Source: Selaginella moellendorffii (Eukaryota > Plantae > Lycopodiophyta). From it: DNA of 64,000 bases. Shown in pieces: positions 24,635 through 63,425 of this stretch (positions within the stretch are counted from its first letter, which is position 1; each line of letters opens with the position of its first letter). Location of the stretch: assembly GCF_000143415.4 (NCBI RefSeq), contig NW_003314270.1, forward strand, positions 742,453 through 806,452. Direction: 5' to 3'. Position numbers and translations under genes: made by a program. The notes beneath the pieces were generated by a model, which was not told where the DNA came from, searched no databases, and saw only the letters and a program-made list of their open reading frames with translations.

Positions 24635-25928
24635 TCTTCTTATAGAAATCGAGAAACGCTCTTTTCGAGATCAACTAACTTGAATCGCTCTCAAGAACTC
24701 TACTTGCAGGATATGGATGAATAAATCTCTCGCAAATTACGGTAAGACAACTATTCCCCGTGGAACATGAAGGGAAGTTGCGTTGGGAGACAAAACTTTG
24801 TGGAGACTTCCTCTCATGAAAAAACGCAACTTTGCACCACGCACACGTGGACAACACACGAATCCACGTGGTGGATGTTCATTGGGCTGAATCTAGATGC
24901 CTACAATATTCCATCTTGGAATGTCCATTATATACACCATATGCCATTGGCAGGATAGTAATTCTGGTATTCTCTTGTGCGAGAAACTTTTCTAATGGAT
25001 ATCCGATTTTTTCGACGCGGTGGATTCAAAAAATAATTAAGTTAGACCATGCTCTAATTTAGTATTTTAGTAAAAATTATACAAATACTCGATGCTTGTG
25101 CGCGGTATAATTCCATCGAGGTGGAGCAATCATGCAGTCATGCCCGTCCCAACGCTTGTTGTATGACAGTCGGCACGATTTATAAAAAAATTTAGAGTTG
25201 TGTGAACCTTCCCTTCACTTGTTTTTCACTCAATAGCGTTTAAGTTGAGACAAACTTCCAAACTTTCAACCTCAAATCCTCTCTTTTTGACCAACTTTCT
25301 CGAACTGTACGAGTTTTAAGTTTTAACATCTCACAGCCCCATGTGAAGTCACAGGAAACGTTCTTGACACTTTCTGCCGCAAGTCTGCCCAGCTAAAGTG
25401 ATCAAATTAGTATGTAATTAACAAACAACCGACCTTAAGTGGATCATGATCATAGCAAATTAGTATATAAAGCATTCTTTTCCAGTGACCATACCAACCA
25501 TGAATATTAAAATCAAGAACAAATGAAGGTCATTAGCATCCAAACAATTTGGAAGTCCCAATCACAAACAACAAAAGAATCAAGCTGTGCCGTCAAGCTA
25601 TAGACATCGCCTAAGCTCCACTCAAAGTTTATATAACGCCGTCCAGATTCCACTGCCCCGATTTGTCCCGTTCTTTATGCAACTACCTCTGAAAGTATAT
25701 AGTTCCAATGATGAAGAAAACCGTCCATGATAAAACATATTTTATCATCCTTAGCTTACAATTTTAAACGTATACTTTGAAAGATGCTTACAATTAGCAG
25801 GATTCTATTGACCGTCTGAATTTGGAATTTGGACTACTGTATGTACACAGAAGTGCTAAACCTGTGATCAAGAAGTTATTTCTCAGAGGAAAACTTGCAA
25901 ATGCTAAAAATTGCAAGAATATTCTCCA

Positions 25929-26311
25929 TCAACCTTGCACAGGCTTGGGGCAAGAGCAAGTCTTAGCTGCATGTCCGGCCGCACTTGCAACAAGGCTCGC
26001 CTGAGGCCGTTTTCTTGGCACAGGTGCATGTCTCACATTTGCAGTTTGCACCGCATGCGCAGAAAATTCCGTCGTGGCCACTACCACAGGATCAAAAAAG
26101 TTGCCAACCCTTAAATTGAGAAGAATAGTAGAAGCTTACTTTCGTCCAGCAGCTCTGAATATCCGGAGTTGTCGATCAATCAGAAGTTACAGAAACACAA
26201 ACCATGCGTTTATCACTTACTTGCAATTAGCTCCAGATGGGCATGGACTCCCGCAAGCACACCCGCAGTGCAGCCGCAGGTAGCAGAAGCAACAGCAGCA
26301 GTGGTGGCCAT
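25929..26311 (-). pseudogene. Type-4 (Ec-like) metallothionein, copy 1, disabled
   Basis: Same 3-exon layout as copies 2 and 3. A 1-bp deletion in exon 1 (acccgc vs accccgc) shifts the frame, and a 2-bp loss in exon 3 gives TGC AGC TAA. Confidence 0.85.
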
Positions 26312-28092
26312 TTCTCGATCAAGTGAAGATGAGACACAGTGATTCATTCCTTCATTCAATAGCTGTTTACATAGTCTAGTAGTACCCACTAAGAAACATG
26401 AGACCAATAGATTACAGTAAATTGTTTTGATAATCTTACATTTGCAAAACTCTTCTAAGTCTTCTGCCACCAAGCCTTTTGTCCCCGCCCTAGGCTTCAT
26501 CAATCTGCCTGCCGCACCTTCTGACGCATCTTGGGAGACACGCCCAAAGCTGCCCGTTTATAGAATGGCTGCATTATGCACAAGTTTACCAGATTATTAC
26601 TAGATGCAATGTACAAAAGGGATATTAGGGTATATGTGACCTTTTAGTCCCTAGCATAAACCTTTGTCCTATTTAAATGCTCATAAGGTTTAGATTCTAT
26701 TCATTTCAAACTTTTCGGCTATCAATTCTTGAGCTTCAGCCGGGAGTTTTGAGAGCTGCTCGGGGTATGGATGGACTACCACAACAACGAATGTGCTCTT
26801 GCCATTATCATCGAGACAACTTTAAAATCCGAGACTGGGATGGATGAAGACACCTTGCAAATGCTGTGCTCCTTAAGGATTGGCTGGCAAGCGTGTTTAA
26901 CAAGGTTGAGGAGGTGAGATTTAATATCCACCGACTTGATCAACACCCAAAGGAGCATCCTTACATTTGGGAAGATGTTAGCAAATTGCTATTTCTAGGA
27001 ATGGAGCCTGAAATCTTCCAATACTTACACGAATTGGATATTCAACACGAAGATGAGTTGTGGATGCCAACTCATCTTCGAAGGGATGGGAGGAGTCGAT
27101 TCCATATCCAGGCCCAAAGCAATGTCCAGGTAGACTGCCCAGTGGCCGACCATATAAGCAACAGAGAATGGAAGTGAAAATACTTTGGAAAGAATAACCA
27201 AAGATAGATAGATAGATAAATAGATAATTGTGTTTATAGTTGCCGTTAACCTGTGAGAGCATGGGACTTTTGAGTAGGAGGGCAGGAGAGCAGGGAGTCG
27301 GGCATTCAAGCATTTGCTATATGTTTCAGTCTGGGAAGTGGGGGCATGTTGCTTTGATGAGCAGTGCCCTCCAGTCTTCAATGACATAGATAAAGAGCAG
27401 TCATTGCTGCCATGGTCGTGTTTCCCATGAATGCTAGAGGTCTTGGGCATGGAAGTCTAGTGTGGGAAAGAAGAGCCATAGCCGCATGTAGGCAGGGTAG
27501 TCATATATGGCATCTCTAGGCGTGAGCGGCTTCTGTCTTCCGCCTAGTTCAACGTGAAGTGAGTGCATGCTTGTTCGGTATGTTGCAAGGATGCGCCTGG
27601 TGGTGTAGCCTGTGGCGTTGTGGATGCTGGGCCAATGATTCTCCCAGGGTTGATGTCGTGGAGATAGTCCTGGAAGCAGTTGGTAACCAAAAGTGTTGGT
27701 TTATGGATTGCTGGAATAAAAATACTTGGTTCGAAATGTTACGCAATTGATTAGAATATACTTAAAAGAATGGAATGTAATGACATAATGCTGCTTTTCT
27801 TTGCTTTTCTTCATGGAGATTTCTAAAGATTTTCTATAAAAGCCACAAAACGTAAGAAATAAAAAGGACAATCAAAACGCTGAGCATTCCGGACCAGCTT
27901 CTTTGCCGTTTGTTCGCCCAGCATGCGCGAGGAAGTCCTGTAGAAGGAGAGAGAAAAGGTCTTAGAAAAGAAGAAGTCTCTTTTTTCAGATCGAGAAGAA
28001 AGCAGCCTGACCACAGCTGTGATAATCTCAAAGCAAAACTTTATAATTATTATTGATCTAAAAATTGCATAAAGATCTCTCTTTCAAGTCCA

Positions 28093-28501
28093 TCAACCTT
28101 GCACTGGCTTGGGGCAAGAGCAAGTCTCGCAGCTGCATGTCCGGCCGCACTTGCAGAAGGGCTCGCCTGAGGCCGTTATCTTGGCACAGGTGCACGTCTC
28201 ACACTTGCAGTTTTCACCACATTCGCAGAAAACTCCGTCGTGGCCACTATCACAGGATCAAAAGAGTTGCCGAATCAGCATTTAATTGAAAGGAAAACAC
28301 AAAGCTTACCTTCGTCCAGCAGCACCCGTTGCTGCACATCTGTGATCCAAGGATTTGTCAATCAATCAAAAGCTATAAAAACACAAATGATATCGCTTAC
28401 TTGCAATTATCTCCGCATGGGCATGGATTCCCACAAGCACACCCCGCAGTGCAGCCGCAGGTGGGCGTGATAGCAGCAGCGCCAGCAGCAGCGGTGGCCA
28501 T
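28093..28501 (-). CDS. Type-4 (Ec-like) metallothionein, copy 2, 94 aa, 20 Cys
   Basis: Three GT-AG exons give MATAAAGAAAITPTCGCTAGCACGNPCPCGDNCKCAATGAAGRSGHDGVFCECGENCKCETCTCAKITASGEPFCKCGRTCSCETCSCPKPVQG*. TATA at ~28591-28597 and CATGCA at 28606-28611. Confidence 0.88.
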
Positions 28502-29779
28502 TGCAAAACAAAAAGTGAAGAAAAGAGGACGAAAAAACACTCTATTAGAACAGTGAGGAACTTGATTGAGAAATGCCCACAGTTGCCCACTTTTATAGAA
28601 TGGGTCATGCATTATGCAAGGGCAGGCACGAGTTCACCACCAATTGTTACTGCTGGTAAAAGAAATGCCATTATATTATGTTTTGTATGAGATAAGAAAT
28701 CTAATGAAAGGATAGACAATTGCAGATTTGGAATTGTCCATCTACGCATAAGACCAACGATTTGTACCTTGTCAACCTTCCACTCATTATCTCTCCGGAG
28801 CATCCGTTCCCGAGCATGATCGCAAACCAGGACAGAGAGGAGAGCCATTCGTTTGAGTGCACGTTGCAAGGAAGTTCGTTAGATAGTCGTAATAAGGATC
28901 TGTGCAAGACCTGGACAAGCCACCACAGTCTACAAGTTCGATTGTCTCTATAGAAGCGACTGAAGAGAAGGAGGAAAAGAGAAGGAAGTAGTACCCCATG
29001 GTTTGACATGACGGCTCACAAGAGCCTAAGTTATAAACAAAGCGGACCGTGAAAATCTCGTCATTGGACTGTGCACTTGCCTTTGAATGTGATGAGTTTC
29101 CAAGTACGATGCAGAAGAAAAACAATCGAGGCTAGCTTCTTGGCCTGTTCTCTGTGCTTGGAAACAATGCTGCCTGTTACAGAAAAAAATTCTCGCTCAG
29201 CTTTGTCCTGCCTCGCACTGAAGGATCAAAACCACTGTTCCACGGGAAGTTTTTCAAAGCAACGGACGAGTAAGTAAGTAAGACGTGGGCTTTGCTGCTG
29301 TTCCCTGTGTTGTATGAAGACCGTTCGTAATCCTTCGTAGCCTGGCAGCTGTGAAACGAAATGCGCAAATGTACTCATGATTCTGCAAAGTCGAGATTTT
29401 CCACTGGATCTTCGTCAATGCCTGCCACTTCTATTCCCGAGATCTCCAGCGAAGCTGGGTTGAGTACCTCGATGTTTACCAGGGCGTTGATACGAGCACC
29501 AGGGCGTTGATATGATTTGATAGGTCCAAGCTATCAATCCCAGCGCTCTTGACAATTAAACAGGTGATCTCACGAAGCAGCGTTTTACTGGGAGATTGCT
29601 CCAGCAGAATCCGACTTCCGCTAAAACCTCTTCTTTTGCAATCTCGCGGGCTCTGGTGGACGGAAAAGGAAGCTCGGAGTGGTTCTAAAGAGGTGCGACG
29701 GTGGCTACCAGCGCTCCAGTGGTCTCCTTCGCCAAGGATGGTGTTCCATGCAGCCCTGTGATCTCACGCCCTGGTAAAA

Positions 29780-30340
29780 ACACCCTGGTAAAAATCTCTC
29801 TTTTTCTCCATCGTTCCTGTAGAGAAGCTATTGTTTCGTATTTGGCAGGCATTCCTTCTGGCCGGAGGAAAGCAGGACGAGCCAGAGAGGATTTGGTTTT
29901 GGAGCTGTGATCCATGGCTTTAGCTCGGGAGTTCCTTCACGAGCCTGGGAGATAGACAAGAGCAGCGTTCGAGATGTCTTGGAGAGATAAAGTGGTGTTG
30001 GCATTGTCGAAGTGGATATAACTTTCCCAGATGCCACCAATGCTTTCGATCGAAACTTCATCTATCACTTCCGCTAGATCCATAGCTTCCTAATCTATTA
30101 ACCCTGGGACTTGGAATGGACTGCGTCCAGCTCAACAACTCTTTTTCTTTCAAATTCTTCTGTGAACTAATTGTTTCTTCCAAGAAGATATGATCGCTCC
30201 AAATTGGTTCCATGGTGGACGAGGGAGAAAAGATCGAGGCCGTGGATGAGAGTTATCGACAAACAAGTGGAACAAGGCTCGCTAGTTGTTATTTCAGCTT
30301 TCTATCCTTCTACTAAAGCTTCCATTCTCCAAAACGAATC
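29780..30340 (+). pseudogene. 5'-truncated 11S legumin-like cupin fragment (copy A)
   Basis: Closely similar, in the opposite orientation, to ~42330-42930 (FLLAGGK...IHGFSSGV..RAWE, MIAPNWFHG, EQGSLVVI.AFYP), with stops and deletions. Confidence 0.8.
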
Positions 30341-31138
30341 TTATCATCTCTTTTATTTATTTTCCCTATGATATCTTATTTGGCAGGGAGAAATTCTACA
30401 TTCCTCTACAATGTTCTCTTAATGGTTGCAAGGGTATGATAGTTTCAAAATTAAAATTTAAACTTAATAGTATAAAAATGGCAGTTTTAGGGCAACATAA
30501 GAAGTGAAATTAAATTCTCTAAATTTTTCTAATTCAAAATTAGTATATAATGAATTAAATTATATGCTATAATAATATATATTATTTAAAATACACACAC
30601 AGCAAATTATTTATACTTCATTAAAGTCTTGTCACTTCGTTCCATTTTTCATTGGATTTCTTCTCCAGAGATTCTCGGTTATCTTAGAGCAGGGAAGAAA
30701 TTCTTGGATCATTCTGAAAACACATTTTCTCCTTGTATATCATATTACACTAAACCAAAGCTCTTAGCAATTAATATAATAAATCTAAACCTTATCCTCA
30801 ACGTGAAACTTGTGTTATTTGGCATTTTGCGCCAATAATTTGTACATTCTCTCCCTGTGCAAAGCCACACAATATGTGAACAGAAATGCGCTCTGTAGAT
30901 GTCACAGTGTAGACATTGCAGCTCACGGGGCTATAAAGCCCAGCTTGTTTCCTCATTGTTTTCGTGCAAATCTTCACAGCGAGGCGAGGTGAGGCGGTCA
31001 AGTTGGAGCTCTGAAAGTCCTCTTCTCTCACCTGGGCGATCAAGAGCTGGTTGCATTCTCAAACTTTGGTTCAACCAACAAGAGGGTAAGGATACCTTGG
31101 AATGTTGAGAATTGCTCACATCGTCTCTGCAGAGCGTA

Positions 31139-32365
31139 ATGGACAACGGCAACAGCATCGTCCCCATTGTGGGTATCCAGAAGAAAGTCTCTGAGTACGC
31201 TCTGCCTGCAACCGTTCAAACGCACGAGGTCGTCCCCATTGGAGACGAGCTGCTGCTCATCACCCAGCAGGAGTGCAATGGGATCATCAAAGTCACGCTG
31301 GATCCAGCAACCGGCAGCCCGACATTTGCTTCCAAATTCACCCTGGACGGATCCACATACCAAGGAGCTCATGGCCTCCGCGATTCCAAAGCTTACCCGG
31401 GCTATGCCTGGGTGACGCTCCAGTTCGACAACAGCTTACTTCTCATTGATCCCATTGCGACTCAACAGAATATGCCCCCACGGGTGGAGAAGAGGTTTCG
31501 GCTTCCAAAGCCTCTCCGAGGCCCCCACGTCGTCATAGAGGACGGCTCCGACTACCTGTGGGTGACGTGTAAGGACAGCTGCCACGTGGCGAAGGTGAAT
31601 CACCGGGAGTTTGCTGTCGTGGCATACTACCCCTGCAGCCGCCGCCCCATCTTTGTGGCGCCGACACACGAGTACGTGTACGCCAGCATGGACGAGAGTA
31701 GCAGAATATTCTGCCTACAGAGGAATGGTGAAGCCACATCCGAGATTGAGATTCCGGCCGGGAAGGGAAGCACCCCTGTTGGGCTCATCACTGGCCCCGA
31801 TGGAAATGCCTGGTTCGTCCTGCTTGGGAATTTGAAAGGGGGAACCGGTACCTTTGGAAGGATTAGCATCAACAAGGTGACGAACGAGCCATGGATCACC
31901 TGGTTCCATCTCACCACCGCGACTACTGCCGGACTTCTCCATCTCGCTTTCGACAACGGTGTCTACCATCGCAGCCAGGGCAAGAATCTCAAGATCTGGC
32001 TGCTGGGATCTTCAATCGGCTCCCCCGCGAATATCAATGCGGTGTTCACTGTTCACCTGCAGCCAGATCCTAAGAATCCAGAGCAGCTCCACCTCGAAAA
32101 GGAGGAGGTGATCGTGCTGCCTACGCAGTCCTCGATGGCGCACCGCGTGCTGAAGCACAGATCGGGGCTGTTCGTGACGGAGCTGAGCGCCTCTGTTCTT
32201 GCGCACATCAGTGGGACTGCGGTCTGGGGCCCTGACAGAGACGATCAAGCCGCCGACGCATATGCTCTGTGGGGACTGGGCGCGCTCAGCAATCGCGTTC
32301 ACTACCCAAGCTTGCCACTAGCGGTCGCGGAGCCCACACTGAAGCGCAAGAAGATCTTGGAATAG
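31139..32365 (+). CDS. Intronless 408-aa virginiamycin B lyase (Vgb)/NHL-like beta-propeller protein of microbial appearance
   Basis: Repeated blade motifs, including STPVGLITGPDGNAWFV and GTFGRI typical of Vgb-like propellers. TATAAA at 30932 and a 47-nt GTAAG..CTGCAG 5'UTR intron candidate at 31086-31132. Confidence 0.7.
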   Translation: MDNGNSIVPIVGIQKKVSEYALPATVQTHEVVPIGDELLLITQQECNGIIKVTLDPATGSPTFASKFTLDGSTYQGAHGLRDSKAYPGYAWVTLQFDNSLLLIDPIATQQNMPPRVEKRFRLPKPLRGPHVVIEDGSDYLWVTCKDSCHVAKVNHREFAVVAYYPCSRRPIFVAPTHEYVYASMDESSRIFCLQRNGEATSEIEIPAGKGSTPVGLITGPDGNAWFVLLGNLKGGTGTFGRISINKVTNEPWITWFHLTTATTAGLLHLAFDNGVYHRSQGKNLKIWLLGSSIGSPANINAVFTVHLQPDPKNPEQLHLEKEEVIVLPTQSSMAHRVLKHRSGLFVTELSASVLAHISGTAVWGPDRDDQAADAYALWGLGALSNRVHYPSLPLAVAEPTLKRKKILE

Positions 32366-32399: not shown

Positions 32400-35300
32400 C
32401 AAGTAATGTTAAAATTTTATAATTATAAACATGTTTATAATTTATAAACACAAGATTAACCTTATTGCATATCAGCCATTAGATGGTAGAATAAAGAAAG
32501 AATATTTTAAAAAATGTTTAAAAAAGTTTATAAATTATATACATGTTTATAAATTATAAATACAAGATTAATCTAAATGAATAACAACCATTAGATGGTA
32601 GAATACCCTAGATTATCCAAGCATATTTTAGGTATATTCACTACCATCTCAATTTGCTTAAGCAAACCAAAAGTATATTTAGCTTTTTAATTTGTTTGCT
32701 TCACATCTTTGTTCCTCTATGTTGCAAAGTTAAGTTTATCAAGAAGCACAGTATTAATATCAACTAAATTATATTTTAAATCTTTGTTCTTGATACTAGT
32801 GCAAAAATATCATGTATAATTGCTCAAATAAAAAAGTTCCTGGGTCTCCCTCTAAATATTTCTTTATTTTTTTAAATCTTCAACACTTGTCTATGTACCA
32901 ATTGCAATCATACCAATCCTTATTTGCTACTTGATAAAGAATAATTACATCCACTCCTATTCTCACGTTAGATTGTGTTTGCACACTTGAACTATTATCA
33001 TAGACACTAGCTTTCACCTTTGCTAGTTTGTTTCTTAAGAGAAATGGATTTCCATTAAATGGGATATTATGGTGTATAGTATAGTGAGGAAAAAGTCATT
33101 GATTCAAACACTTCTATATTTTTGGAGCATGAAATATCAAAGAGAATTCAATAATTAACACCAATATTTTATCTTGTGTTACTCCATTTTCTATTGTTTC
33201 ATTTGGGGCAAGAGTTTTTGCTTCAATTATAAACTTTGCTTCAGTTTATAGCAGATCATCTTCATTACCAACAATTACCTATAGAGTCTTTGTAAAATTG
33301 CCCTATAAAAGTCTTCAAATTCCTATGGAGCTTCCCACAATGTTATGACTCTAATAGATTGAAGCATTTACTATGCTTCTATAAAAACTTATTTTTAAAA
33401 TTAGAACTAATTGCTCATTTATTTCTATTCCTAAGAAGTCAACTAGATCACTTATGCTCTACTATTTATATGCTCAAACTATAACTAAATTTTTTCCTAT
33501 TTCTTATGTGCCACAAAAAATTCTAGATTCCCCTTTGTTCTAAATTACTCTAGCTTAATTCATTAAACTTATTGTATTTAGTAGCTCTACTTTAGCATAG
33601 TTGTGCATACTTCCTACTTTGCTAAGAGAATTTCTATAATAGTTTGAACTTGTCAGCCAAAATGGTACTTTCTTTTTTACTAGCTTATCTTAAAAGATTT
33701 TAAAAGAAATTGTTGTGTAAACACCACTTTAGTTGCATATTAAAAAATGTTTCAATAAAGTTATATTTTAATTTATATTTCTTGTGCTTTTTTTGAAGTT
33801 TAGTGCAAGCTTGATCATTAAGGACTAGGTTGTAAGAACCTTTAAATGGATAAACCTATTCCTATGGTATAAAGGTCTTGCTTTCAAGTATTTGTTATGA
33901 AATATGAAAGATGTTTATCCATACTTTCTACCAAGGTCCTTTTTCTGATTGGAGGTGATTATTAGAGTAGCTTACTTGAATTCCTTGGAAGTTGTGGCAA
34001 AAACAGTATATGTGGATGAAGACTTCCACTTGGGGTGCAACTTTGATTAAGCCTGATTACCATTGAATCACTCAACTTTGAACTATCATCAAGTGTATTA
34101 GAAATTGAATACCCTTATTTCAATGGATTGACCACAAATTCCATTATTAGTGTATTAAGATATAAAGAAAAAGTTTGATTTGAAGTTGAGGGTATAAAAT
34201 TTTAAATCATTTCTACTCCTATAGTTAAGTGAGTGATTAAAGAATCTCTTGTTACAAGTAATTGTTAAAGAGATTGAAGGATTCCAAGTTTTGGAGCTTA
34301 TTGAGCTCATTAGAAACATTACTTTAAAAGGATAAATTCAAGTTTTTAGATAATGCCAATTAAATTGTTAGATAAAACATTTATAGAGGTGATAGGAAGA
34401 GAATCTAAAATTTAGATTATTCTTTTCCAATTGAGAAAATGACATAACCCTTTATTTATTGGAAAAAATTATAGCTATCCTCAAAGACGTGCCTCTAGTT
34501 GAAGTATACAATGTTGCTAAAAAGATTTACTAGCTTCCAATCTAAGATTAAAAGAAAATCTCAGTTTATGGTTATATGAAATTGTGGTCTAGATCTATAT
34601 AAACATTTTTTTACATGCTACAGACAATAGAATTTTGCCTAGATTCCTCCTTGAAACAAATAATTTACTATAATGTGTAGTTTTTTTTCTTTTAATATAT
34701 AGTCAATATTCATTAGAAAATATCAATATAAACATTTATAAATAAATATTGCAAAGGTATTATAAAATATTCATCTTCATGAGATATTGTAAATAATTGA
34801 AGAAAAAAATATGAGAGACAATTCATGAGGGTTCAAATATAGAGGAAAAGGCCCATAAACAAAAGTACACCCTTTTTTTCAATTAGTTAAAAGTCAGAAG
34901 AGTAGCGAGCTACAATTCTTAACTTTCATTTATGAAAGCGTATTATTGTATGGAAGTATAATGGATTGTAAGCAACTAAAGAAAATGACTTGAAAAATGA
35001 TTTATAATGGTTCAAATATAAAGGGAAAAAGCTTATGAATAAGTTTTTTTTTAATCAATTAAGAGTTTTAAGATACTTAGGGTTAATGGTCATTGAGTTT
35101 AACTATGGATGACTTCTTGGGAAGGTTAAATTTAAGAATTTACATTTTGTATCAAACAAGTTTTAGGTTTGACTTTGTTAGTTGGTTAAAATAATCACAC
35201 TACATCTTGATATTGATATATGGTGATCTAGCTTGCTATAGCTAAGTTAAATTTGAGGGTAGAATATCAAGAGAGTGGAGTTCTTGAGAGAGTTAGAACT

Positions 35301-38300
35301 TTTAACTTTCATCCACAAGGGTATAAATTTGCAAAGAAATATAGTGAATTGTAAATAGAAAAAAAAGCAAGTCAAAAAATTATCTATAAAGGTTCAAATA
35401 TAAAGGAAAATAATATATAAATAAGAGTGCACCTGTTTTTCTACATGAAAGGGTTTTGGTATATTGACTCTTTAGCTACAAGTAAAAGTTGGTGCCAATA
35501 TGATATAGAAACCATATTAAACAAAGTTTTTTATTTTTAACATCCTTGGGTTTGAATAGTATTGGGTTGGGTGACTTTCTAAGAAGTTCAAATTCAAAGT
35601 TTACAAATACCTATACTATATCTTTTAAATTTAAATAATCTTCAATATAACCATCATCAAATTTTCTTGACTATACTATAACTCTTAAATTTAGATAAGC
35701 TTTATTATAATCATTATCAACTTTTCTTGAAACTAAATAGATCTAATAGCATTTCCTTATAACATAATTTAAATACCATAAAAAAAAGAAAATTTAAGGT
35801 TTGCCTATGGAACACCCATTGAACAAGATAGAGGTCAATACAATAAATTACTTGACCTTAGGGGGGGATAAGTTAATTGCCATATTATATCTATAAAGCT
35901 ATGAATAAAATATTTATTTCCCATATTCCTTATTAGATGCTTAGTTAAGAGATGAGAATCTGAAGTTAATCAAAGAAAAAAAAAACTCCAAGACTACACC
36001 TTTTTTCCTATAGAAATTTATTATTTCTAGGAAATTCAACTATGATGGAATATTATAAGTTAGATCCTTGAGTTAATCCTTCTACTTCATTATTCCCTAG
36101 TTTTAGAAATTCTTTATTGCATTGAATTCATAGTGCTCACCCTTGCAATATAGAATTATAATAAACAACTAAGTGCTTGTTTTTTATAAACCATCAAAAC
36201 ATTAACTCTCTTACAGAAAAAGTCTAAAGGGCTTTTAATGGAATTTATCAAATCTAAGACTTTGGATCCTTGTGAAATATAACAAACTCCCGGATGAATC
36301 CATTGTTGATGTGTAGAATAGTCCTAATAAAAGTTTAAAAGGATCAATGAGAACAATTGAGATTTTATGTCCATGGAGAAATCGAAAGAGGAAGAGTGAT
36401 CATGAGGTCCAGTACTATTAATTCTTTACTGAAATTTTTCATTAAGTTGGATTAGTCATTAGTATTAAACTTTGATTACAAATGAATTAAAGAAAATTTT
36501 AAAAGCAAGAAATCATAACCATTAAATTAAAGAATATCCTAGGATTCTAAGTATATACTTTATACCTATAATAAAAAATTTAAACAAGTAAGAAATTAAA
36601 CTTGATTAAAAATGAATTAGAAAAGTTTAGGAGAGAAAAAGCACAGCCATAGATTTTAAGATATCCTAAAATATAATTGAATATTTTTAAGTATATTTTT
36701 ATATACCTCTTTAAAGTAAACAAATATTGTTATAAATTTAAATACACTGGGCAACTATATGATCCTAAAGGTAGGATTTGGAGGGTGGGTACAAACTTAT
36801 TGTTTATCAAGTCTTAAACTTTAAATTAGACATATGAGAATTGTTTAATTTCTCATAAATAGGTTTTGTATTACTCTTATTTCATTAATAAAAATGGAAA
36901 CTTCCTCGTTTTATTTTTTTACAAGTGTTTAGATTTTTTCTTCACACAAGTGTGATGATATAAGCTGATAAGTCTAAACTATCCATGGAAAAATTGCAAT
37001 AATTACTTTAAAAAACTATAAGTACATTCATGTAATACATCTCCTTTTTATGAGAGAGATAAGATTATAATATTATAATCAATTTGGCATGGCTCCAAGC
37101 AAAACCTTTCCAAGCAACACTTTTGAATATATTGAGAGGGCATTAATATCATTATAGGGCCATTTTCTTTTGAGAATTTACCAAGGAAAGCAGAAAGAAC
37201 TTCAAAACTTTTATGAATATATAAAAATATTTTACCTTTAAGTATGTGTATTTAAAATGCTGAAATATTGACTTCAAATATGTATATGATATACAATATG
37301 GGATAGGAGTTTATCACTTTGTATATATATATTCAAGGGTCATGAAAAGTGAATGAGTTAGTAGGAGTTAAAGCAAATAAATGTATACCAAGAGCATTAG
37401 TAATACTAATCCAATGTTATGTAGTCAACTTACAAGAGAATAAAGGTAGATGAAGTTAGAGATAATTTAAATTTTAGCCACTCTTCCTATGATTCTTTTA
37501 CATTCAACAACTTATTTTCAAATTAAATACTAAAAAAATATTTTTATACCTCAAAAGAAAATAGAGAGAGAAAAATATCTATATAAAGAAAAATCTTCTC
37601 TACAATCATTTCTACTATGAATCTTTAAGACATTGTTGTACTTTCTTCAAATAAAAATATTAAGTTATTACTTAGTTTTAATGAATTTTTTTGTGAATAT
37701 GGGTGGATTCTTGATGTTGTGGCTAGTGCAATCAATTGCCTCAATTGCAAGCAAGATTTTCTACGCTTCTTTCCATTTTCATAAAGCATGTTGTTCATAA
37801 TTGATTTTTTTTTAGACTTAAATAATTAATTATAATCACCTAAAGCAAGCATTTTGGTAGTAGAGTCTAAAGGATTAACAAGGTTTTTAATTTGTTAAGA
37901 ATAAAACCTTAATTATAAAGTTTTTCTACCAACTATCATTTATAATTAAACTATAGCTTTAGAAACTCTATTTAATCTTTTATTTCCTCTTCAAATTTAA
38001 GTTTAAAACTTCTCACTTAACTAAACTAATTCTTTATAAAAACTCTTTTATTTCTTTTACAAATTTCTTTTTCATTGTTGATAAAGTTATTTTTTAACTT
38101 ATAGTTTTAGTGCTCGTCACTCTGTAAATCGTAAGATATTTCGCTTTGCCGATCCTCCACACTTTGTCTAGATGCTTATCTTGATGCCCGATTATGCTGC
38201 ATGTGAGGACAATAAGAAGGCCAAGTTTACTGGACAGTATATATTGTGCTTGTTTCTTTTAATATTTTATTTACTTCTTGTTTTGGATTTTCCTAATCAA

Positions 38301-58816: not shown

Positions 58817-61800
58817 TTTGATTGCCCCTGAAGAGTGCTTGGATTTGGGATTTTGGTTTAAATTTAACTTTTGCATTATTTAGATCTAGTTTTTTCCATT
58901 TCCTTTCTTTTATTCTTTCTTTTTAGGATTTTGGTTTAGATCTAGCTTTTTGCATTGTTTAGATCTACCATTTCCTTCTAGCTTTTTGTCATTTCTCTTC
59001 TTTTGCTCTTTCTTTTTCATTCGTCTTTATGGCAGATCAACAATCTCCTCCTTTGACTCTAGAGCAGTAGTTGGTACAATTGCTTGATGCTATGCGCTTG
59101 AAATTGAACAACCAAACTCAATTGATGGCGGCGTTCACGGCACGTGGTACAACTCCTCTTGCTCTTGGTGCCAATCCTCGCGTTCGGCCGGAGTTCTTTC
59201 GCGGGAATTCTGGGGATGATGTGTACCATTGGCTCGATCACTTCACGGTGATTGCCACATATCATTTTTGGGATGATGCTTGACGTTTGCATGAGTTTCC
59301 CATGTGTCTCCAAGGGACGGCATTGCAGTGGTATAACAGTTTGAGCACAACCACTCGTGGGGATTGGAGCGTTCTCCAGGACGTCTTCAAATGCACCTTC
59401 AGACATGCCGATGACTGTGATGACGCCTTCTAACAATTGCATCGTCTTCGCCAAGGGCCATTTGAGTTGGTGATGCAATTTGGCATTCGTTTCCAAAGTC
59501 TTTTGCTTCGTGCGGAGCCAAATATGTCGAAGCGGATCAAGCTAGGAATATTGTGGCTAGCACTTCGTCAAGATCTTGTCAGACTTGTGCATGCACTTGC
59601 TCCCGCCACCCTTGACGATGCTCTTCGCTTAGCACAATGTTATGAGACATTGCCTCTTCCACTTCTCACTGCACATCCTTCAGCTCCACTTCCTATAGGT
59701 GATGGTCCTGTTCTAATGGAGATTGATGCTGCTGCTACTCGAGTCCAAGGACAAGGGCGAGGACATGGTCGTGGCCGTAATGTTCGCTACTGGGCGTGTG
59801 ATGAAGTTGGTCATACTTATCGGCGTTGTCGGTGTTTTCCGGATTGGTGACCTCCATTTCCTGGGTGGAGACCTTGGCGTCAGCAACGTCCCATTGGTGC
59901 TGCTGCAGTGGACGGTTTGGACACCGAGATACATCCGGGAAATGAGGAGTTGCGCGAGTAACGGAGGGACCTTGCATGAATAAGTTAGTGACCCCTCCAT
60001 CTTTCTTTTAGAAGTATCATCAAGGGGTTCACTCGGCACCAGTTCATCCAGTGTTTACTTTCCAAGCTCATTTCTCCTATTATTTTCTCCGTGTTGGTTG
60101 ATACAAGTTTGAGTTTATCTTCTATTGCTCGACCTGTTGCCACACATTGCCGTTTACACTTGCGTCGTGCGGCAGAACTAATTTTCATTCTTTATGGCAA
60201 CGGCCGTACACATGCATGTGCATGGGATGAGGTGGACTTGGTTGTGCATATGGGCGATCTCAAGCTTGAGTTGCAGTCATTGCGGGTGGTGCTAAGTCAA
60301 GCTTTTGACCTCATTCTTGGTATGGATTGGTTGCAGCGCAATCATGCTAAATGTGATTTTAAAGCGTCTCCCCCTTGTCTCATACTTCCTTATGTTTCAT
60401 ACATTCCTCTCACTTCTGTACCTCTTTGTCCCTATATTTCTACCTCTGCTTCCATTATTTTTGTTTCCCCACTATTTCCTCCTATGTTTCCATCTTGTTC
60501 TGCTCTTCCCTTTTCCAATCCCTCCGACGATCTTTGTGTTGCAGCGGTGGACCAGCTCATGAAGGAGTATTCTGATCTTTTTGAATTTGACCTATCGTCT
60601 GGGGCCAAGATTGCCACACGTCATCCAATTCCAACCGGGGATGCTCATCCAATCAAGGTTCCTGTTCGTCGTCGGTCACCCAAGGAGATCAAGATTTTAC
60701 GTACAAATGTCAAGGAGATGTTGGAGAAGGGTGTTATTCGGAAGTCACGGAGTCCTTGGGTATGTGAACCTCATCTTATGATGAAGCCTGATAGGAGTAT
60801 TCGTTTCTGCATCGACTATCATCTATTAAACGAAGTAACAATCCTAGATGTGTACCCTCTTCCTCACACTACTGATCTCTTGGATCGTCTGGGGCGAAGT
60901 CGTTGGTTCACCAAACTAGATCTTGCTTCTGGGTACTGGCAAGTACCGATGGCCGAAGAAAATATTCTTAAGACTGCTTTCTGTACACCATTTGGTTTGT
61001 ATGAGTTCTTGGTGATGCCGTTTCGTTTGAATAATGCTCCAGCAACTTTCCAACAGATGATGGACAAGGTTCTTTGCGATATGCCGTAGGTGACTGTTGA
61101 CTTCATTGATGATGTCTTGATCCACTCGGAGGGGATGTGGGAGGAACACATTCGTAATGTTTGTAAAGTGTTGGATCGGCTACGCGACGTTGGTTTAAAG
61201 CTGAAGCGGACAAAGTGCGTGTTTGGGTTCAAGGATACAATTTGTCTTGGGTACCATATTTCTCGTGAGGGTTTGCAAGTTGATCCTGACAAACTTGTGG
61301 CTGTTCTAAAGTTCCCTACTCCGAAGTGTGTGAATGATGTGCAGCGCTTCTTTGGCAAGGTGCAATATCTCGGTCGTTTTGTGGATCATCTTTCTGATCG
61401 CACTGCACCGTTGTGAGCGTTGCTGAAGTCATCAACATCATCTTTCATCTAGTCTCCGGATTGTGAGCAGGCGTTCGGGGATCTCAAAGAGCTGTTGACG
61501 ACTCCTCCGGTTTTGGCATATCCTAACTACACTCGACTTTTTATTTTGCGCGTGGATGCTTCTGACATTGGTCTTGGAGGTGTGTTGATGCAAGAGAGCT
61601 CGAGTGTGCCTGGTCAGCGTCATCTCATTGCATATATAAGCCATACATTACAACCAACAGAAATGAACTACTCCACAACAGAGAAGGAGTGTTTAGTAGC
61701 AGTTTGGGGTTTTAAGAAACTTCATGCATATCTACATGGTTCTTGGACGTTACTTGAAGGTGATCATGCTACTATTATTTCATTATTGAAGCGGAAGAAC

Positions 61801-63425
61801 CTGGTTGGTTGTACTTCTCGATGGGCTTTGAAGCTTCAGATATATGATTTTGATGTTGTTCATCACCCAGGGAGTTCTTTGGCTGATGCTGATGCCCTTT
61901 TTCGAGCTCCTCTTCCTTCTCCATTCTCTTCTCATGTTTCTGATGAGCCTATTGTTCCAGCCTCTATGGATTTTCTAGATGAGGATTCTGTGCCGTCGGC
62001 GGTTATTATACTTGACGTTCAGTGTCCATAAGGCGTAGAGCAAGATCTACCTTCTCTTGATGAGGTTCGCGAGGCTCAAAAGATTGAGCCGTGGATTCGA
62101 CGGCTTTGAGATGGGTTGAGAATCCTGCATCACTTGCTGATGACTTGCCTTTCCGGCATTTACATTCTCAATATTGCCTTGAAGACAGCCTTCTTTATTT
62201 TATGAGGATGGATCCTGATAATCATTTACGACTGGTGGTGCCTTCTATCTTTATTCCATGGTTTCTCCATGCCTACCATGATTCTCTTGTTTTGGGTGGG
62301 CATATGGAACATTGTCGTGTAATTGAGAAGCTGCGCAGGTCTTTCTATTGGCCGAAGATGCGACGTGATATTATCCGGTATGTGCGTAACTACGTTTGGT
62401 GCCAAGCTTGTAATACTCCCCCTCAAGCTGTGGAAGGACAGTTGGAGTCAATTGCAGTTTCCCATCCGTTTGAGTTGGTAGTGTTTGATCTTATGGGACC
62501 TTTTCCACGGTCGACTGCTGGCAATGAGTATGTTATTGTTGCTTCTGACTACTTGACTCGTTGGGTGGAAGTTGGTGCTCTTGCTAGTGCCTCTACAACT
62601 GCTATTGGATACTTCCTCCTCAATCGAGTGGTGTTCCAACATTCTTGTTCAGAGTGGATTCTTTCGGATAATGGTCCCGCATTTATGGCTGAGGCATTTC
62701 ATGTTTTGACGTCTCGGCTGGGGATACGCCACACTTTCACGAGTGTTTATCATCCACAACCAGACGGTCTGGTGGAACGGCTTGTTCGGACATTCAAGGG
62801 GATGATTGCGAAGTATGTGAACTTTCAGCATTCGGATTGGGATGGTTATTTGCCGTCTCTTCGGTATGCATATGTTACAGGGGTGCAGAGTTCTATTGGT
62901 GCTTCACTATATAAACTCCTATATGGTCATGATCTAATATTACCAACGAAGATGGGTCTACCTTTGCAATTGCCACGAGCTGCGGATGCTAGGTCGTGGG
63001 ATTAGTATTTGACGAGCATTCTTCCACTTGTCCGAGCGGAGTCTACCGAATACTTAGGCAGCGTACAAGTGGGACAACAACGGTGGTACAACTCCCATCA
63101 TTGTCCACCTGCGGAGTACAAAGTGGATGATTTGGTGTTAGTCCATTTTCCCCATCTTACGGTACATGGTTTATCTAAGGGGCTCCTTACACAGTGGAAA
63201 GGACCATATCAGGTGTTATAGCAAGTTGGACCACAAGTTTATGAGGTTTGGCATGATGTTCAACAGGCCGATCCTCCAGAGATTGTGCGTGCAGCAGTTG
63301 AAACGCTTCATACAAAGGGATTAGGAATAGTTAATACCACCTACAGATCTGCCGATGCCTCCTCCTGACATTCCTCTAGATCCTGGCCCATCTACAAGAG
63401 AACTATGACAGTCTTCCATTATTCC

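What the first reader, a model, noticed from the sequence alone, without database searches (positions are those of the whole stretch)
31139..32365. Candidate horizontally acquired Vgb-like beta-propeller gene with host-style promoter features
Seen: an intact, intronless, GC-rich 408-aa ORF between AT-rich DNA and pseudogenes. It has a TATA box (30932), a short 5'UTR intron candidate (31086-31132) and a C-terminal KRKK. Recall: the PxGLxxGPDGNxWF blade pattern typifies bacterial Vgb-like proteins, and the sequence resembles uncharacterised fungal/bacterial proteins rather than any angiosperm family I know. Inference: a microbe-to-plant transfer that has been domesticated.
Basis: partly seen in the sequence, partly recalled or inferred. 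Interest (0 to 1): 0.75.

Follow-up and report, generated by a model that had tools for sequence, protein, structure and literature searches.

The report
Ancient bacterial-type propeller gene in Selaginella
A spikemoss (Selaginella) gene for a seven-bladed propeller enzyme of bacterial type, found among plants only in clubmosses and ferns, most likely entered early vascular plants from a microbe over 400 million years ago; the reaction it catalyses is unknown.

Summary
The ORF is real: 31139-32365 (+) is an intact, single-exon gene of 408 aa.

The host is the lycophyte Selaginella moellendorffii (scaffold GL377574.1), not an angiosperm. The gene's GC content and codon usage are ordinary for this genome.

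It is not contamination. The second haplotype carries a 97% identical copy between the same plant genes.

Among plants, relatives turned up only in lycophytes (Diphasiastrum, an unnamed transcriptome) and ferns (Pteridium, Cyclosorus, Adiantum, Ceratopteris). An exhaustive profile search found none in seed plants, bryophytes or algae.

In trees, these plant proteins, a Pezizomycotina clade and three bacterial metagenome proteins form one supported clan (96/95) nested among bacteria. The order inside the clan is unresolved. Plant monophyly is not rejected (AU p = 0.43-0.66). A plant-only C-terminal extension ending in a basic cluster supports a single origin.

The model is a confident 7-bladed propeller, closest to Vgb lyase (Z 32.9, 19% identity), but it fails the Vgb family cut-offs. 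The reaction is unknown.

The scan found this gene before on other DNA of this genome, probably the allelic copy, and reached the same reading.

The parts
30932..30937 (+). TATAAA, a candidate TATA box 207 nt upstream of the ATG
   Evidence: Read directly. Identical in the second haplotype. Its use was not tested.
31086..31132 (+). Candidate 47-nt GT-AG intron in the 5'UTR. It contains an out-of-frame upstream ATG at 31102 that splicing would remove.
   Evidence: Sequence. The GT, the AG and the length are conserved in haplotype 2. There is no transcript evidence. No upstream coding exon is possible: the frame that would join across this intron is open only from 30993 and holds no ATG (read).
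31139..32365 (+). Single-exon CDS of 408 aa plus stop: a Vgb-like seven-bladed beta-propeller protein
   Evidence: ORF. It is identical to the annotated protein on GL377574.1. It aligns end to end with homologues. The AlphaFold model has pLDDT 90.8 and 28 strands, that is 7 blades.
31223..31225 (+). His29, the family-invariant His at the inner-strand motif of blade 1
   Evidence: Invariant in 101 aligned sequences. Blade register.
31370..31372 (+). His78, the invariant His of blade 2
31526..31528 (+). His130 in the G-P-H motif of blade 3. This motif position aligns with His228 and His270 of S. aureus Vgb.
   Evidence: Nearly invariant, at least 90% of the 101 sequences. Invariant in the smaller sets. 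The HMM alignment of the blade motif to the Vgb chains shows the H270A change at this position in 2z2p.
31775..31816 (+).
   Evidence: Regex match. It aligns to the Vgb blades.
31940..31942 (+). His268, the invariant His of blade 6
32141..32143 (+). His335, the invariant His of blade 7
32282..32362 (+). Plant-specific C-terminal extension (residues 382-408) ending in the basic cluster KRKK (402-405, window 32342-32353)
   Evidence: The tail after the conserved Gly381 is 27-62 aa in lycophytes and ferns, except in the truncated Ceratopteris model. It is 0-24 aa in all bacterial, fungal and unnamed environmental rows, mostly 8-18. Basic clusters are present in Selaginella, Diphasiastrum, P0012, Pteridium and Cyclosorus.

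Best explanation
This is a resident nuclear gene of Selaginella moellendorffii. It descends from a bacterial-type gene acquired horizontally before lycophytes and ferns diverged, roughly 420 million years ago or earlier. It was kept in both lineages and lost in the ancestor of seed plants.

Since the transfer it has taken on host codon usage. It kept its intronless coding region. It gained a plant-only C-terminal extension ending in a basic, NLS-like cluster.

The product is a seven-bladed beta-propeller of the Vgb-lyase structural class. It belongs to a separate, uncharacterised subfamily with a conserved His at the inner-strand motif of five of the seven blades. These are the positions that carry the catalytic His228 and His270 in Vgb.

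I infer a metal-dependent enzyme, a lyase or hydrolase, that opens an ester or lactone bond in a small molecule at the top of the central channel. In the plant it plausibly acts on a microbial metabolite.

Shown: the gene's integrity, its integration in the genome, its distribution, its phylogenetic clan, its fold and its conserved residues. Inferred: the timing, the single origin, the metal site, the chemistry and the localisation.
For: Host and integration:
- The window is GL377574.1 of GCA_000143415.2.
- It carries DYW-PPR, LRR, WD40 and kinase genes.
- The second haplotype (GL377615.1) has a 97% identical 408-aa copy in the same LRR - WD40 - gene - cupin - ORF569 order, with collinear flanks 87-98% identical.
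- GC3 is 0.70 and RSCU r = 0.83 against window genes. The high-GC bacterial homologues measured have GC3 0.89-0.96; the Leptolyngbya copy has 0.47.

Distribution:
- Plant members are two Diphasiastrum genes with adjacent locus tags (O6H91_03G049300 and 049400); the one whose locus I fetched is intronless.
- The other plant members are Pteridium, Cyclosorus (run identified through PMC6913697), Adiantum, Ceratopteris and two further transcript sets.
- The exhaustive profile search of 1.84 billion representatives gave only 50 clusters at E < 1e-30. None of those I could name or place is from a seed plant, bryophyte or alga.

Phylogeny:
- Plants, Pezizomycotina and the bacterial proteins P0123, P0314 and P0315 form a clan with 96/96 and 96/95 support. 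The clan is nested among bacterial sequences.
- Lycophytes get 94/88 and 87/92. Ferns get 100/100. Plants form one clade at 87/79.
- AU tests do not reject plant monophyly: p = 0.657, with the constrained tree better by 5.95 lnL, and p = 0.429.
- The plant-only C-terminal extension with a basic cluster is an independent shared character.
- The age of the vascular-plant ancestor, about 420 My, is taken from PMC12448838.

Protein:
- The model has pLDDT 90.8.
- The best structural match is Vgb 2z2n: Foldseek E = 7.5e-16, TM 0.81 by target; VIA Z 32.9, rmsd 2.7 A, 288 of 293 residues aligned, model 14-360 to chain 2-294.
- All 18 residues invariant across 101 homologues are retained.
- Vgb binds its substrate and Mg2+ at polar residues of blades 6 and 7 (PMC8916777). 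H270A is catalytically inactive (title of 2z2p).
Against: - The order inside the clan is unresolved, with support of 61-63. In that tree ferns and lycophytes are not sisters.
- Identity between Selaginella and the other plant proteins (43-48%) is no higher than to bacteria (46-52%), and the plant stems are long (0.5-0.8 substitutions per site). Long-branch effects are therefore possible.
- Between the two haplotypes dN/dS is 0.58 on only 20 differences. Two neighbouring genes give 0.37 and 0.12. Recent constraint is not demonstrated.
- No transcript carrying exactly this protein was on record in the assembly index. Expression in Selaginella is not shown here.
- Bacterial gene neighbourhoods are not conserved and give no clue to the substrate.
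- The metal site is read from blade register, not from coordinates or experiment.
Confidence: 0.68

Rival explanations
1. A fungus lies on the path. Either a Pezizomycotina-like fungus gave the gene to early vascular plants, or plants gave it to fungi. In this view the gene entered eukaryotes once from a bacterium like P0123.
For: Plants and the Pezizomycotina clade share the 96/95 clan. In the 72-row tree the eukaryotes group together at SH-aLRT 80, with P0123 outside. The AU test does not reject plants plus fungi as one clade that excludes the three bacteria (p = 0.419). The nearest Atlas structure cluster is ascomycete (TM 0.80-0.82).
Against: In the careful trees the bacterial proteins sit between plants and fungi, or as sister of plants (86/59; 61-63). 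Plants are never nested inside the fungal clade, which is itself 100/100. The fungal proteins carry N-terminal signal-like leaders and lack the plant C-terminal extension, so the two groups share no derived eukaryotic feature.
Confidence: 0.17
2. Two or more independent transfers from related bacteria, one into lycophytes and one into ferns, or a later plant-to-plant transfer between them.
For: In the 70-row careful tree ferns and lycophytes are not sisters. Identity between the two groups is only 43-48%. Ferns have a 47-92-aa N-terminal extension that lycophytes lack.
Against: The best 62-row tree and the constrained 72-row tree unite the plants. AU p is 0.43-0.66. The C-terminal extension with a basic cluster is shared by both plant groups and absent from every bacterial and fungal row. 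Convergence on that feature is less likely than common descent.
Confidence: 0.1
3. An ancient eukaryotic gene inherited vertically and lost from nearly all lineages.
For: Two eukaryotic groups, plants and Pezizomycotina, are neighbours in the tree.
Against: This would need losses in algae, bryophytes, seed plants, animals, most fungi and protists. The clan is nested several supported nodes deep among bacterial sequences of many phyla. The two plant loci I could check are intronless.
Confidence: 0.03
4. Contamination or misassembly: a microbial fragment joined to plant DNA.
For: The closest hits are bacterial. The gene is intronless and flanked by AT-rich DNA.
Against: Both haplotype scaffolds (3.15 Mb and 1.47 Mb) hold the gene in the same order of plant genes, with continuous collinear flanks. 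Codon usage is plant-like. Independent genomes (Diphasiastrum chromosome of 82.8 Mb, Ceratopteris chromosome of 210 Mb, Adiantum contig) and transcriptomes hold orthologues.
Confidence: 0.01

Closest known systems
Virginiamycin B (streptogramin B) lyase Vgb of Staphylococcus (PDB 2Z2N, 2Z2O, 2Z2P, 2QC5)
   Same: Both are seven-bladed beta-propellers with a one-to-one blade register (VIA Z 32.9, rmsd 2.7 A, 288 of 293 residues; Foldseek TM 0.81). The blade motif of the P-x-G-I/L ... G-P-x-G-x-x-W-F type is shared. His occupies the motif position of blades 6 and 7, where Vgb has His228 and His270.
   Different: Identity is only 17-19%. The sequence match exists only at the level of the repeated blade, in several registers. 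The protein scores below the Pfam gathering score (36.4 against 50) and far below the NCBIfam Vgb(A) and Vgb(B) cut-offs (about 20 against 600). It is 408 aa against 299, with insertions in blades 6 and 7 and a C-terminal tail. It has five conserved His rather than two. The Glu partners of the Vgb Mg2+ site could not be mapped. No link to streptogramins is known.
Uncharacterised 'Vgb family' or 'NHL repeat' proteins of Longimicrobiaceae, Chromobacterium, Leptolyngbya and Pezizomycotina (for example Hyaloscypha K444DRAFT_611566)
   Same: These are true homologues over more than 90% of the length at 40-52% identity, with E-values of 1e-60 to 1e-95. They share 18 invariant residues.
   Different: The bacterial proteins mostly have short ends, and the fungal ones have signal-like leaders. 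Only the plant proteins have the long C-terminal extension with a basic cluster. No member has a tested function.
Other bacteria-derived genes confined to seed-free vascular plants, such as the aerolysin-like genes of Ceratopteris and Selaginella and fern Tma12 (PMC9477723)
   Same: The evolutionary pattern is the same: bacterial relatives, presence in lycophytes and/or ferns, absence from seed plants, and a proposed transfer to early vascular plants.
   Different: The protein family is unrelated. This gene is single-copy in Selaginella and is not expanded in tandem arrays here. It was not named in any paper I could search.

Membership tests
Vgb streptogramin B lyase (Pfam PF24684; NCBIfam NF000022 and NF000096) | Seven-bladed beta-propeller fold superposable on Vgb | tested here: met
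   Model pLDDT 90.8. 2z2n: Foldseek E = 7.5e-16, TM by target 0.81. VIA Z 32.9, rmsd 2.7 A, 288 aligned. Generic WD40 propellers follow closely at Z 29-31, so fold alone does not single out Vgb.
Vgb streptogramin B lyase (Pfam PF24684; NCBIfam NF000022 and NF000096) | Score at or above the curated family cut-offs | tested here: not met
   Pfam Vgb_lyase scores 36.4 bits against a gathering score of 50, and only over residues 119-231. NCBIfam Vgb(B) scores 21.2 and Vgb(A) 19.9 bits against a cut-off of 600.
Vgb streptogramin B lyase (Pfam PF24684; NCBIfam NF000022 and NF000096) | Catalytic and Mg2+-binding polar residues in blades 6 and 7 (His270 is essential) | tested here: inconclusive
   Invariant His268 (blade 6) and His335 (blade 7) sit at or next to the motif position that holds His228 and His270 in Vgb. 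The blades align one to one. No residue-level superposition was available, and the acidic ligands were not mapped. The location of the Vgb site is taken from PMC8916777.
Vgb streptogramin B lyase (Pfam PF24684; NCBIfam NF000022 and NF000096) | Linearises streptogramin B by C-O bond elimination | not testable with these tools
   This needs an enzyme assay.
Uncharacterised five-His Vgb-like subfamily (bacteria, Pezizomycotina, lycophytes, ferns) | Full-length homology and retention of the family-invariant residues | tested here: met
   198-222 homologues at 40-52% identity over 90% or more of the query. T28, H29, Q43, H78, G79, W91, K145, P170, F172, G210, V214, G215, G219, W225, F239, H268, S291 and H335 are invariant in 101 sequences that include the window protein.
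SMP-30 / gluconolactonase / LRE-like six-bladed lactonases (Pfam PF08450) | Match to the SGL profile and a six-bladed fold | tested here: not met
   There was no PF08450 hit even at E <= 1. The model has seven blades. Some database names of homologues use this label, but the label is not supported here.
Horizontally acquired nuclear gene of a plant | Physically integrated between host genes, not a contaminant | tested here: met
   The gene order and collinear flanks are the same in both haplotype scaffolds. Plant genes lie on both sides.
Horizontally acquired nuclear gene of a plant | Phylogeny places it within or beside the donor group, against the species tree | tested here: met
   The clan of plants, Pezizomycotina and three bacterial proteins (96/96, 96/95) is nested among bacteria of many phyla. 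The exact donor is not resolved.
Horizontally acquired nuclear gene of a plant | Absent from the host's other relatives (seed plants, bryophytes, algae) | tested here: met
   No such protein appears among the listed word-search hits or among the 50 clusters at E < 1e-30 of the exhaustive profile search that could be named or placed. Some unnamed fragments remain.
Horizontally acquired nuclear gene of a plant | Expressed and under selection in the host | tested here: inconclusive
   Transcript-like contigs exist for the fern and P0012 orthologues. None was on record for the exact Selaginella protein. Haplotype dN/dS is 0.58 on 20 differences. All family invariants are retained.

The most novel reading that the evidence does not exclude
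The subfamily is a new kind of propeller metalloenzyme. Its ring of five conserved histidines around the central channel would bind a metal centre unlike the Mg2+ site of Vgb. Early vascular plants captured it from soil bacteria at about the time Pezizomycotina did, and plants redirected it to the nucleus through a newly added C-terminal basic tail. It would then have a plant-specific role kept for more than 400 million years in seed-free vascular plants only.
Probability: 0.15. Interest if true: 0.7.

Novelty: new member of a known kind. Interest (0 to 1): 0.45.

Why it matters
The gene adds a well-supported case to the short list of microbial genes fixed in early vascular plants and later lost in seed plants. 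Unusually, a fungal clade and a small bacterial group sit in the same supported clan. The gene could therefore help date and direct gene traffic among soil bacteria, ascomycetes and the first vascular plants.

The protein family is uncharacterised in all three kingdoms. A single biochemical study, covering metal content, substrate screen and localisation of the tail, would annotate several hundred proteins. For genome annotation, the practical point is that names such as 'virginiamycin B lyase' attached to relatives are not supported by the family cut-offs.

Tried and rejected
- Bacterial gene neighbourhoods for a functional clue: 20 neighbours in 13 loci were scanned. Nothing recurs. They include a PAS-MCP protein, glyoxalase, aminotransferase, ferritin-like protein, radical SAM enzyme, an ALO-type oxidase and an SGL lactonase.
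- Sequence mapping of the Vgb catalytic residues by phmmer and by profile against PDB: the alignments cover only repeated blades, in several registers.
- dN/dS: only the two Selaginella haplotypes could be compared. The second Diphasiastrum paralogue lies outside the fetched 10-kb flanks.
The exon structure of the Ceratopteris and Adiantum genes and further loci could therefore not be fetched.
- Literature: accession numbers of the haplotype-2 gene gave zero hits. The Ceratopteris genome paper, the Lycopodium preprint and the 2025 HGT review do not mention this family.
- Richards et al. 2009 and Korczynska et al. 2007 are not held. A secondary source lists the fungus-to-plant genes of Richards et al., and a propeller is not among them.
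- An upstream coding exon was rejected. The frame that would join across the candidate intron has no ATG, and the lycophyte homologues start at the same place.
The candidate 5'UTR intron was not removed in silico for any search.
- The Atlas look-up added only generic Vgb/SGL-labelled clusters and an ascomycete structural neighbour.
Full report
**1. Observation**

The window holds an open reading frame at 31112-32365 (+). Its first ATG, at 31139, gives a 408-aa protein plus stop.

GC is 0.53-0.58 over the ORF. It is 0.29-0.34 in the 900 bases upstream and 0.24-0.33 for about 8 kb downstream.

- TATAAA at 30932-30937.
- GT at 31086 and AG at 31131-31132, a 47-nt interval.
- The blade motif P-V-G-L-I-T-G-P-D-G-N-A-W-F at residues 213-226.
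- KRKK at residues 402-405.

The candidate intron contains an out-of-frame ATG at 31102, which splicing would remove. The frame that would read across the junction has no ATG upstream. 31139 therefore stands as the start, and the Diphasiastrum and P0012 proteins begin at the same point.

**2. Whose genome**

The other large ORFs of the window are land-plant genes. They are two PPR proteins (one with E and DYW domains), LRR proteins with LRRNT_2, a WD40 protein and a kinase, beside a Ty3-type retroelement.

The exact protein is encoded on GL377574.1, a 3.15-Mb scaffold of GCA_000143415.2. Its near-identical cluster mates are named Selaginella moellendorffii. The host is thus a lycophyte, not an angiosperm.

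The gene is not compositionally odd for this genome. Its GC is 0.573 and its GC3 0.70, inside the range of seven neighbouring ORFs (GC3 0.60-0.80). Its codon usage correlates with theirs at r = 0.83. The high-GC bacterial homologues measured have GC3 of 0.89-0.96; the Leptolyngbya copy has 0.47.

**3. Not contamination**

The assembly's second haplotype (GL377615.1, 1.47 Mb) carries a 408-aa copy that is 97% identical. It lies in the same order: LRR, WD40, two small genes, this gene, cupin, a 569-aa ORF, response regulator. The flanks are collinear at 87-98% identity.

**4. Relatives**

The word-index search found 198 homologues over about 92% of the length.
- The best, at 46-48% identity, are metagenomic and Longimicrobiaceae proteins.
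- Many Pezizomycotina proteins follow at 40-43%.
- Two Diphasiastrum complanatum proteins with adjacent locus tags and a Pteridium aquilinum transcript stand at 43-45%.

A profile of the plant sequences brought up two more transcript-borne proteins. P0042 comes from run SRR8185329, which PMC6913697 identifies as the fern Cyclosorus parasiticus. P0124 shares the fern N-terminal motif.

P0012 occurs on eight single-gene, transcript-like contigs of one RNA-seq series. It groups with Diphasiastrum.

P0123, the closest protein of all at 52%, lies on a contig of prokaryotic build. Its start overlaps the stop of an FTCD_C gene, and its GC3 is 0.89. It has two relatives, at 71% and 68%, on JGI metagenome contigs of 11.7 and 6.6 kb.

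A scan of GTDB species genomes gave 19 named bacterial loci. They include Gemmatimonadota, Cyanobacteria, Betaproteobacteria, Acidobacteriota, Verrucomicrobiota, Chloroflexota, Planctomycetota, Myxococcota and others.

The claim of transfer rests on absence elsewhere, so I ran the exhaustive profile search once. Only 50 clusters reach E < 1e-30.
- The top ones include Adiantum nelumboides and Ceratopteris richardii genes.
- The rest that could be named or placed by BLAST are bacterial or fungal. They include a divergent subfamily in Mortierella and Glomeromycotina that groups with actinobacterial proteins.
- No seed plant, bryophyte or alga appeared.

**5. Trees**

A careful IQ-TREE run (62 rows, LG+C20 PMSF) gave this arrangement. 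P0123 is sister to a plant clade (87/79). The plant clade is made of ferns (100/100) and lycophytes (94/88). The whole is sister (86/59) to the Pezizomycotina clade (100/99). The joint clan has 96/96 support.

With Adiantum, Ceratopteris and the divergent subfamily added for rooting, the same clan (SH-aLRT 95) lies several supported nodes inside bacterial diversity.

With P0314 and P0315 added, the clan keeps 96/95. Its inner order collapses to support of 61-63: ferns, then lycophytes, then the three bacteria with the fungi.

AU tests do not reject:
- plants as one clade (p = 0.657, with the constrained tree better by 5.95 lnL; p = 0.429);
- plants plus fungi to the exclusion of the three bacteria (p = 0.419).

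The sequence data therefore fix the clan and its bacterial surroundings. They do not fix the donor or the number of entries.

**6. An independent character**

After the conserved Gly381, bacterial, fungal and environmental proteins end within 0-24 residues, mostly 8-18. Lycophyte and fern proteins run on for 27-62 residues. The exception is the Ceratopteris model, which is cut short at both ends.

Most plant tails end in a basic cluster:
- Selaginella: K-R-K-K
- Diphasiastrum: K-K-R
- P0012: K-R-A-R-K
- Pteridium: K-R-P-R
- Cyclosorus: R-K-R-R-R

This shared derived tail favours one origin for the plant genes.

Fungal proteins instead carry hydrophobic N-terminal leaders that look like signal peptides. 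Ferns add an N-terminal extension of 47-92 residues.

The Selaginella and Diphasiastrum coding regions are intronless.

One gain before the lycophyte-euphyllophyte split and one loss in the seed-plant stem is the most economical history. The vascular-plant ancestor is put at about 420 My in PMC12448838.

**7. The protein**

AlphaFold with a 101-sequence alignment gives pLDDT 90.8 and 28 strands, that is seven four-stranded blades.

Vgb lyase is the best solved match. Foldseek gives E = 7.5e-16, TM 0.81 by target and 17% identity. VIA-align gives Z 32.9, rmsd 2.7 A, 288 of 293 residues and 19% identity, with model 14-360 aligned to chain 2-294. Generic seven-bladed propellers follow at Z 29-31.

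At the sequence level the protein fails membership. Pfam Vgb_lyase scores 36.4 bits against 50. NCBIfam Vgb(A) and Vgb(B) score about 20 against 600. The profile-to-PDB alignment matches only the repeated blade, in several registers.

The family has 18 invariant residues in 101 sequences. Four of them, His29, His78, His268 and His335, together with the nearly invariant His130, lie at the start of the motif-bearing strand of blades 1, 2, 3, 6 and 7. Blades 4 and 5 have Ile and Val there.

In Vgb the same motif position holds His228 and His270. H270A is the inactive variant crystallised in 2z2p. Substrate and Mg2+ bind at polar residues of blades 6 and 7 (PMC8916777).

From this I infer a metal-dependent active site at the mouth of the central channel, and bond-opening chemistry on a small ester or lactone. 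I put that at about one in three, because nothing else constrains it. Bacterial neighbourhoods are not conserved.

**8. Selection and expression**

The two haplotypes differ by 7 synonymous and 13 non-synonymous changes, dN/dS 0.58. The WD40 gene gives 0.37 and the 572-aa ORF 0.12. Five of the twelve replacements cluster at residues 197-208, and none touches an invariant residue. This is too little to show constraint or its loss.

Long-term constraint is implied by the retained invariants.

Transcripts exist for the fern and P0012 orthologues. I could not show expression in Selaginella, because only the genome record carries the exact protein.

**9. What is known**

No searchable paper names this gene or family in plants.

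The pattern has precedent in the aerolysin-like genes of Ceratopteris and Selaginella (PMC9477723).

After my own analysis was complete, the scan's notebook showed that another piece of this genome had been reported with the same reading. That piece is very probably the allelic copy (s1-418927). It agrees with this report and is not independent evidence.

**10. Limits**

Fern exon structures and the second Diphasiastrum locus were therefore not examined.

No residue-level structural superposition was available.

**Verdict**

The horizontal-transfer reading is supported in substance, but it must be re-dated and re-hosted. This is an ancient acquisition shared by lycophytes and ferns. The donor is unresolved and the chemistry unknown.

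Noticed in passing
window 25925-26110, 28045-28504, 29787-30083: Three stretches upstream of the gene are 83-90% identical, in inverted orientation, to DNA in and next to the cupin (11S legumin-like) gene of the second haplotype (L038 16967-18671).
   Followed up: partly
window 35236-37489: About 2.25 kb of the AT-rich block downstream has no counterpart in the second haplotype. The flanking matches abut at L038 14052-14060. This is a haplotype-specific insertion or deletion, possibly a transposable element.
   Followed up: no
window 32400-32600: Directly after the stop codon, two copies of an AT-rich unit of about 100 nt, each ending in a shared 20-nt stretch, follow each other (read).
   Followed up: no
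window 60091-63005: Ty3/gypsy-type retroelement ORFs with protease, reverse transcriptase, integrase zinc-binding and integrase core domains.
   Followed up: no
proteins P0153, P0173, P0168 (no window coordinates): Mortierella alpina and the Glomeromycotina Ambispora and Racocetra carry a divergent sister subfamily of this propeller. It groups with actinobacterial proteins (Sciscionella, Catenulispora), apart from the Pezizomycotina clade. This is a candidate second bacteria-to-fungus transfer.
   Followed up: partly
L008 3725-5131 (Leptolyngbya sp. PCC 7375): The cyanobacterial homologue has an N-terminal extension of about 96 residues containing an R-R-x-L-L stretch followed by a hydrophobic run. 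That resembles a twin-arginine export signal, whereas most bacterial members have no leader.
   Followed up: no
same scaffold, about 375 kb before the window's start: The scan's notebook lists a separate microbial-type beta-propeller lactonase gene of Selaginella as another transfer candidate. It was not examined here.
   Followed up: no
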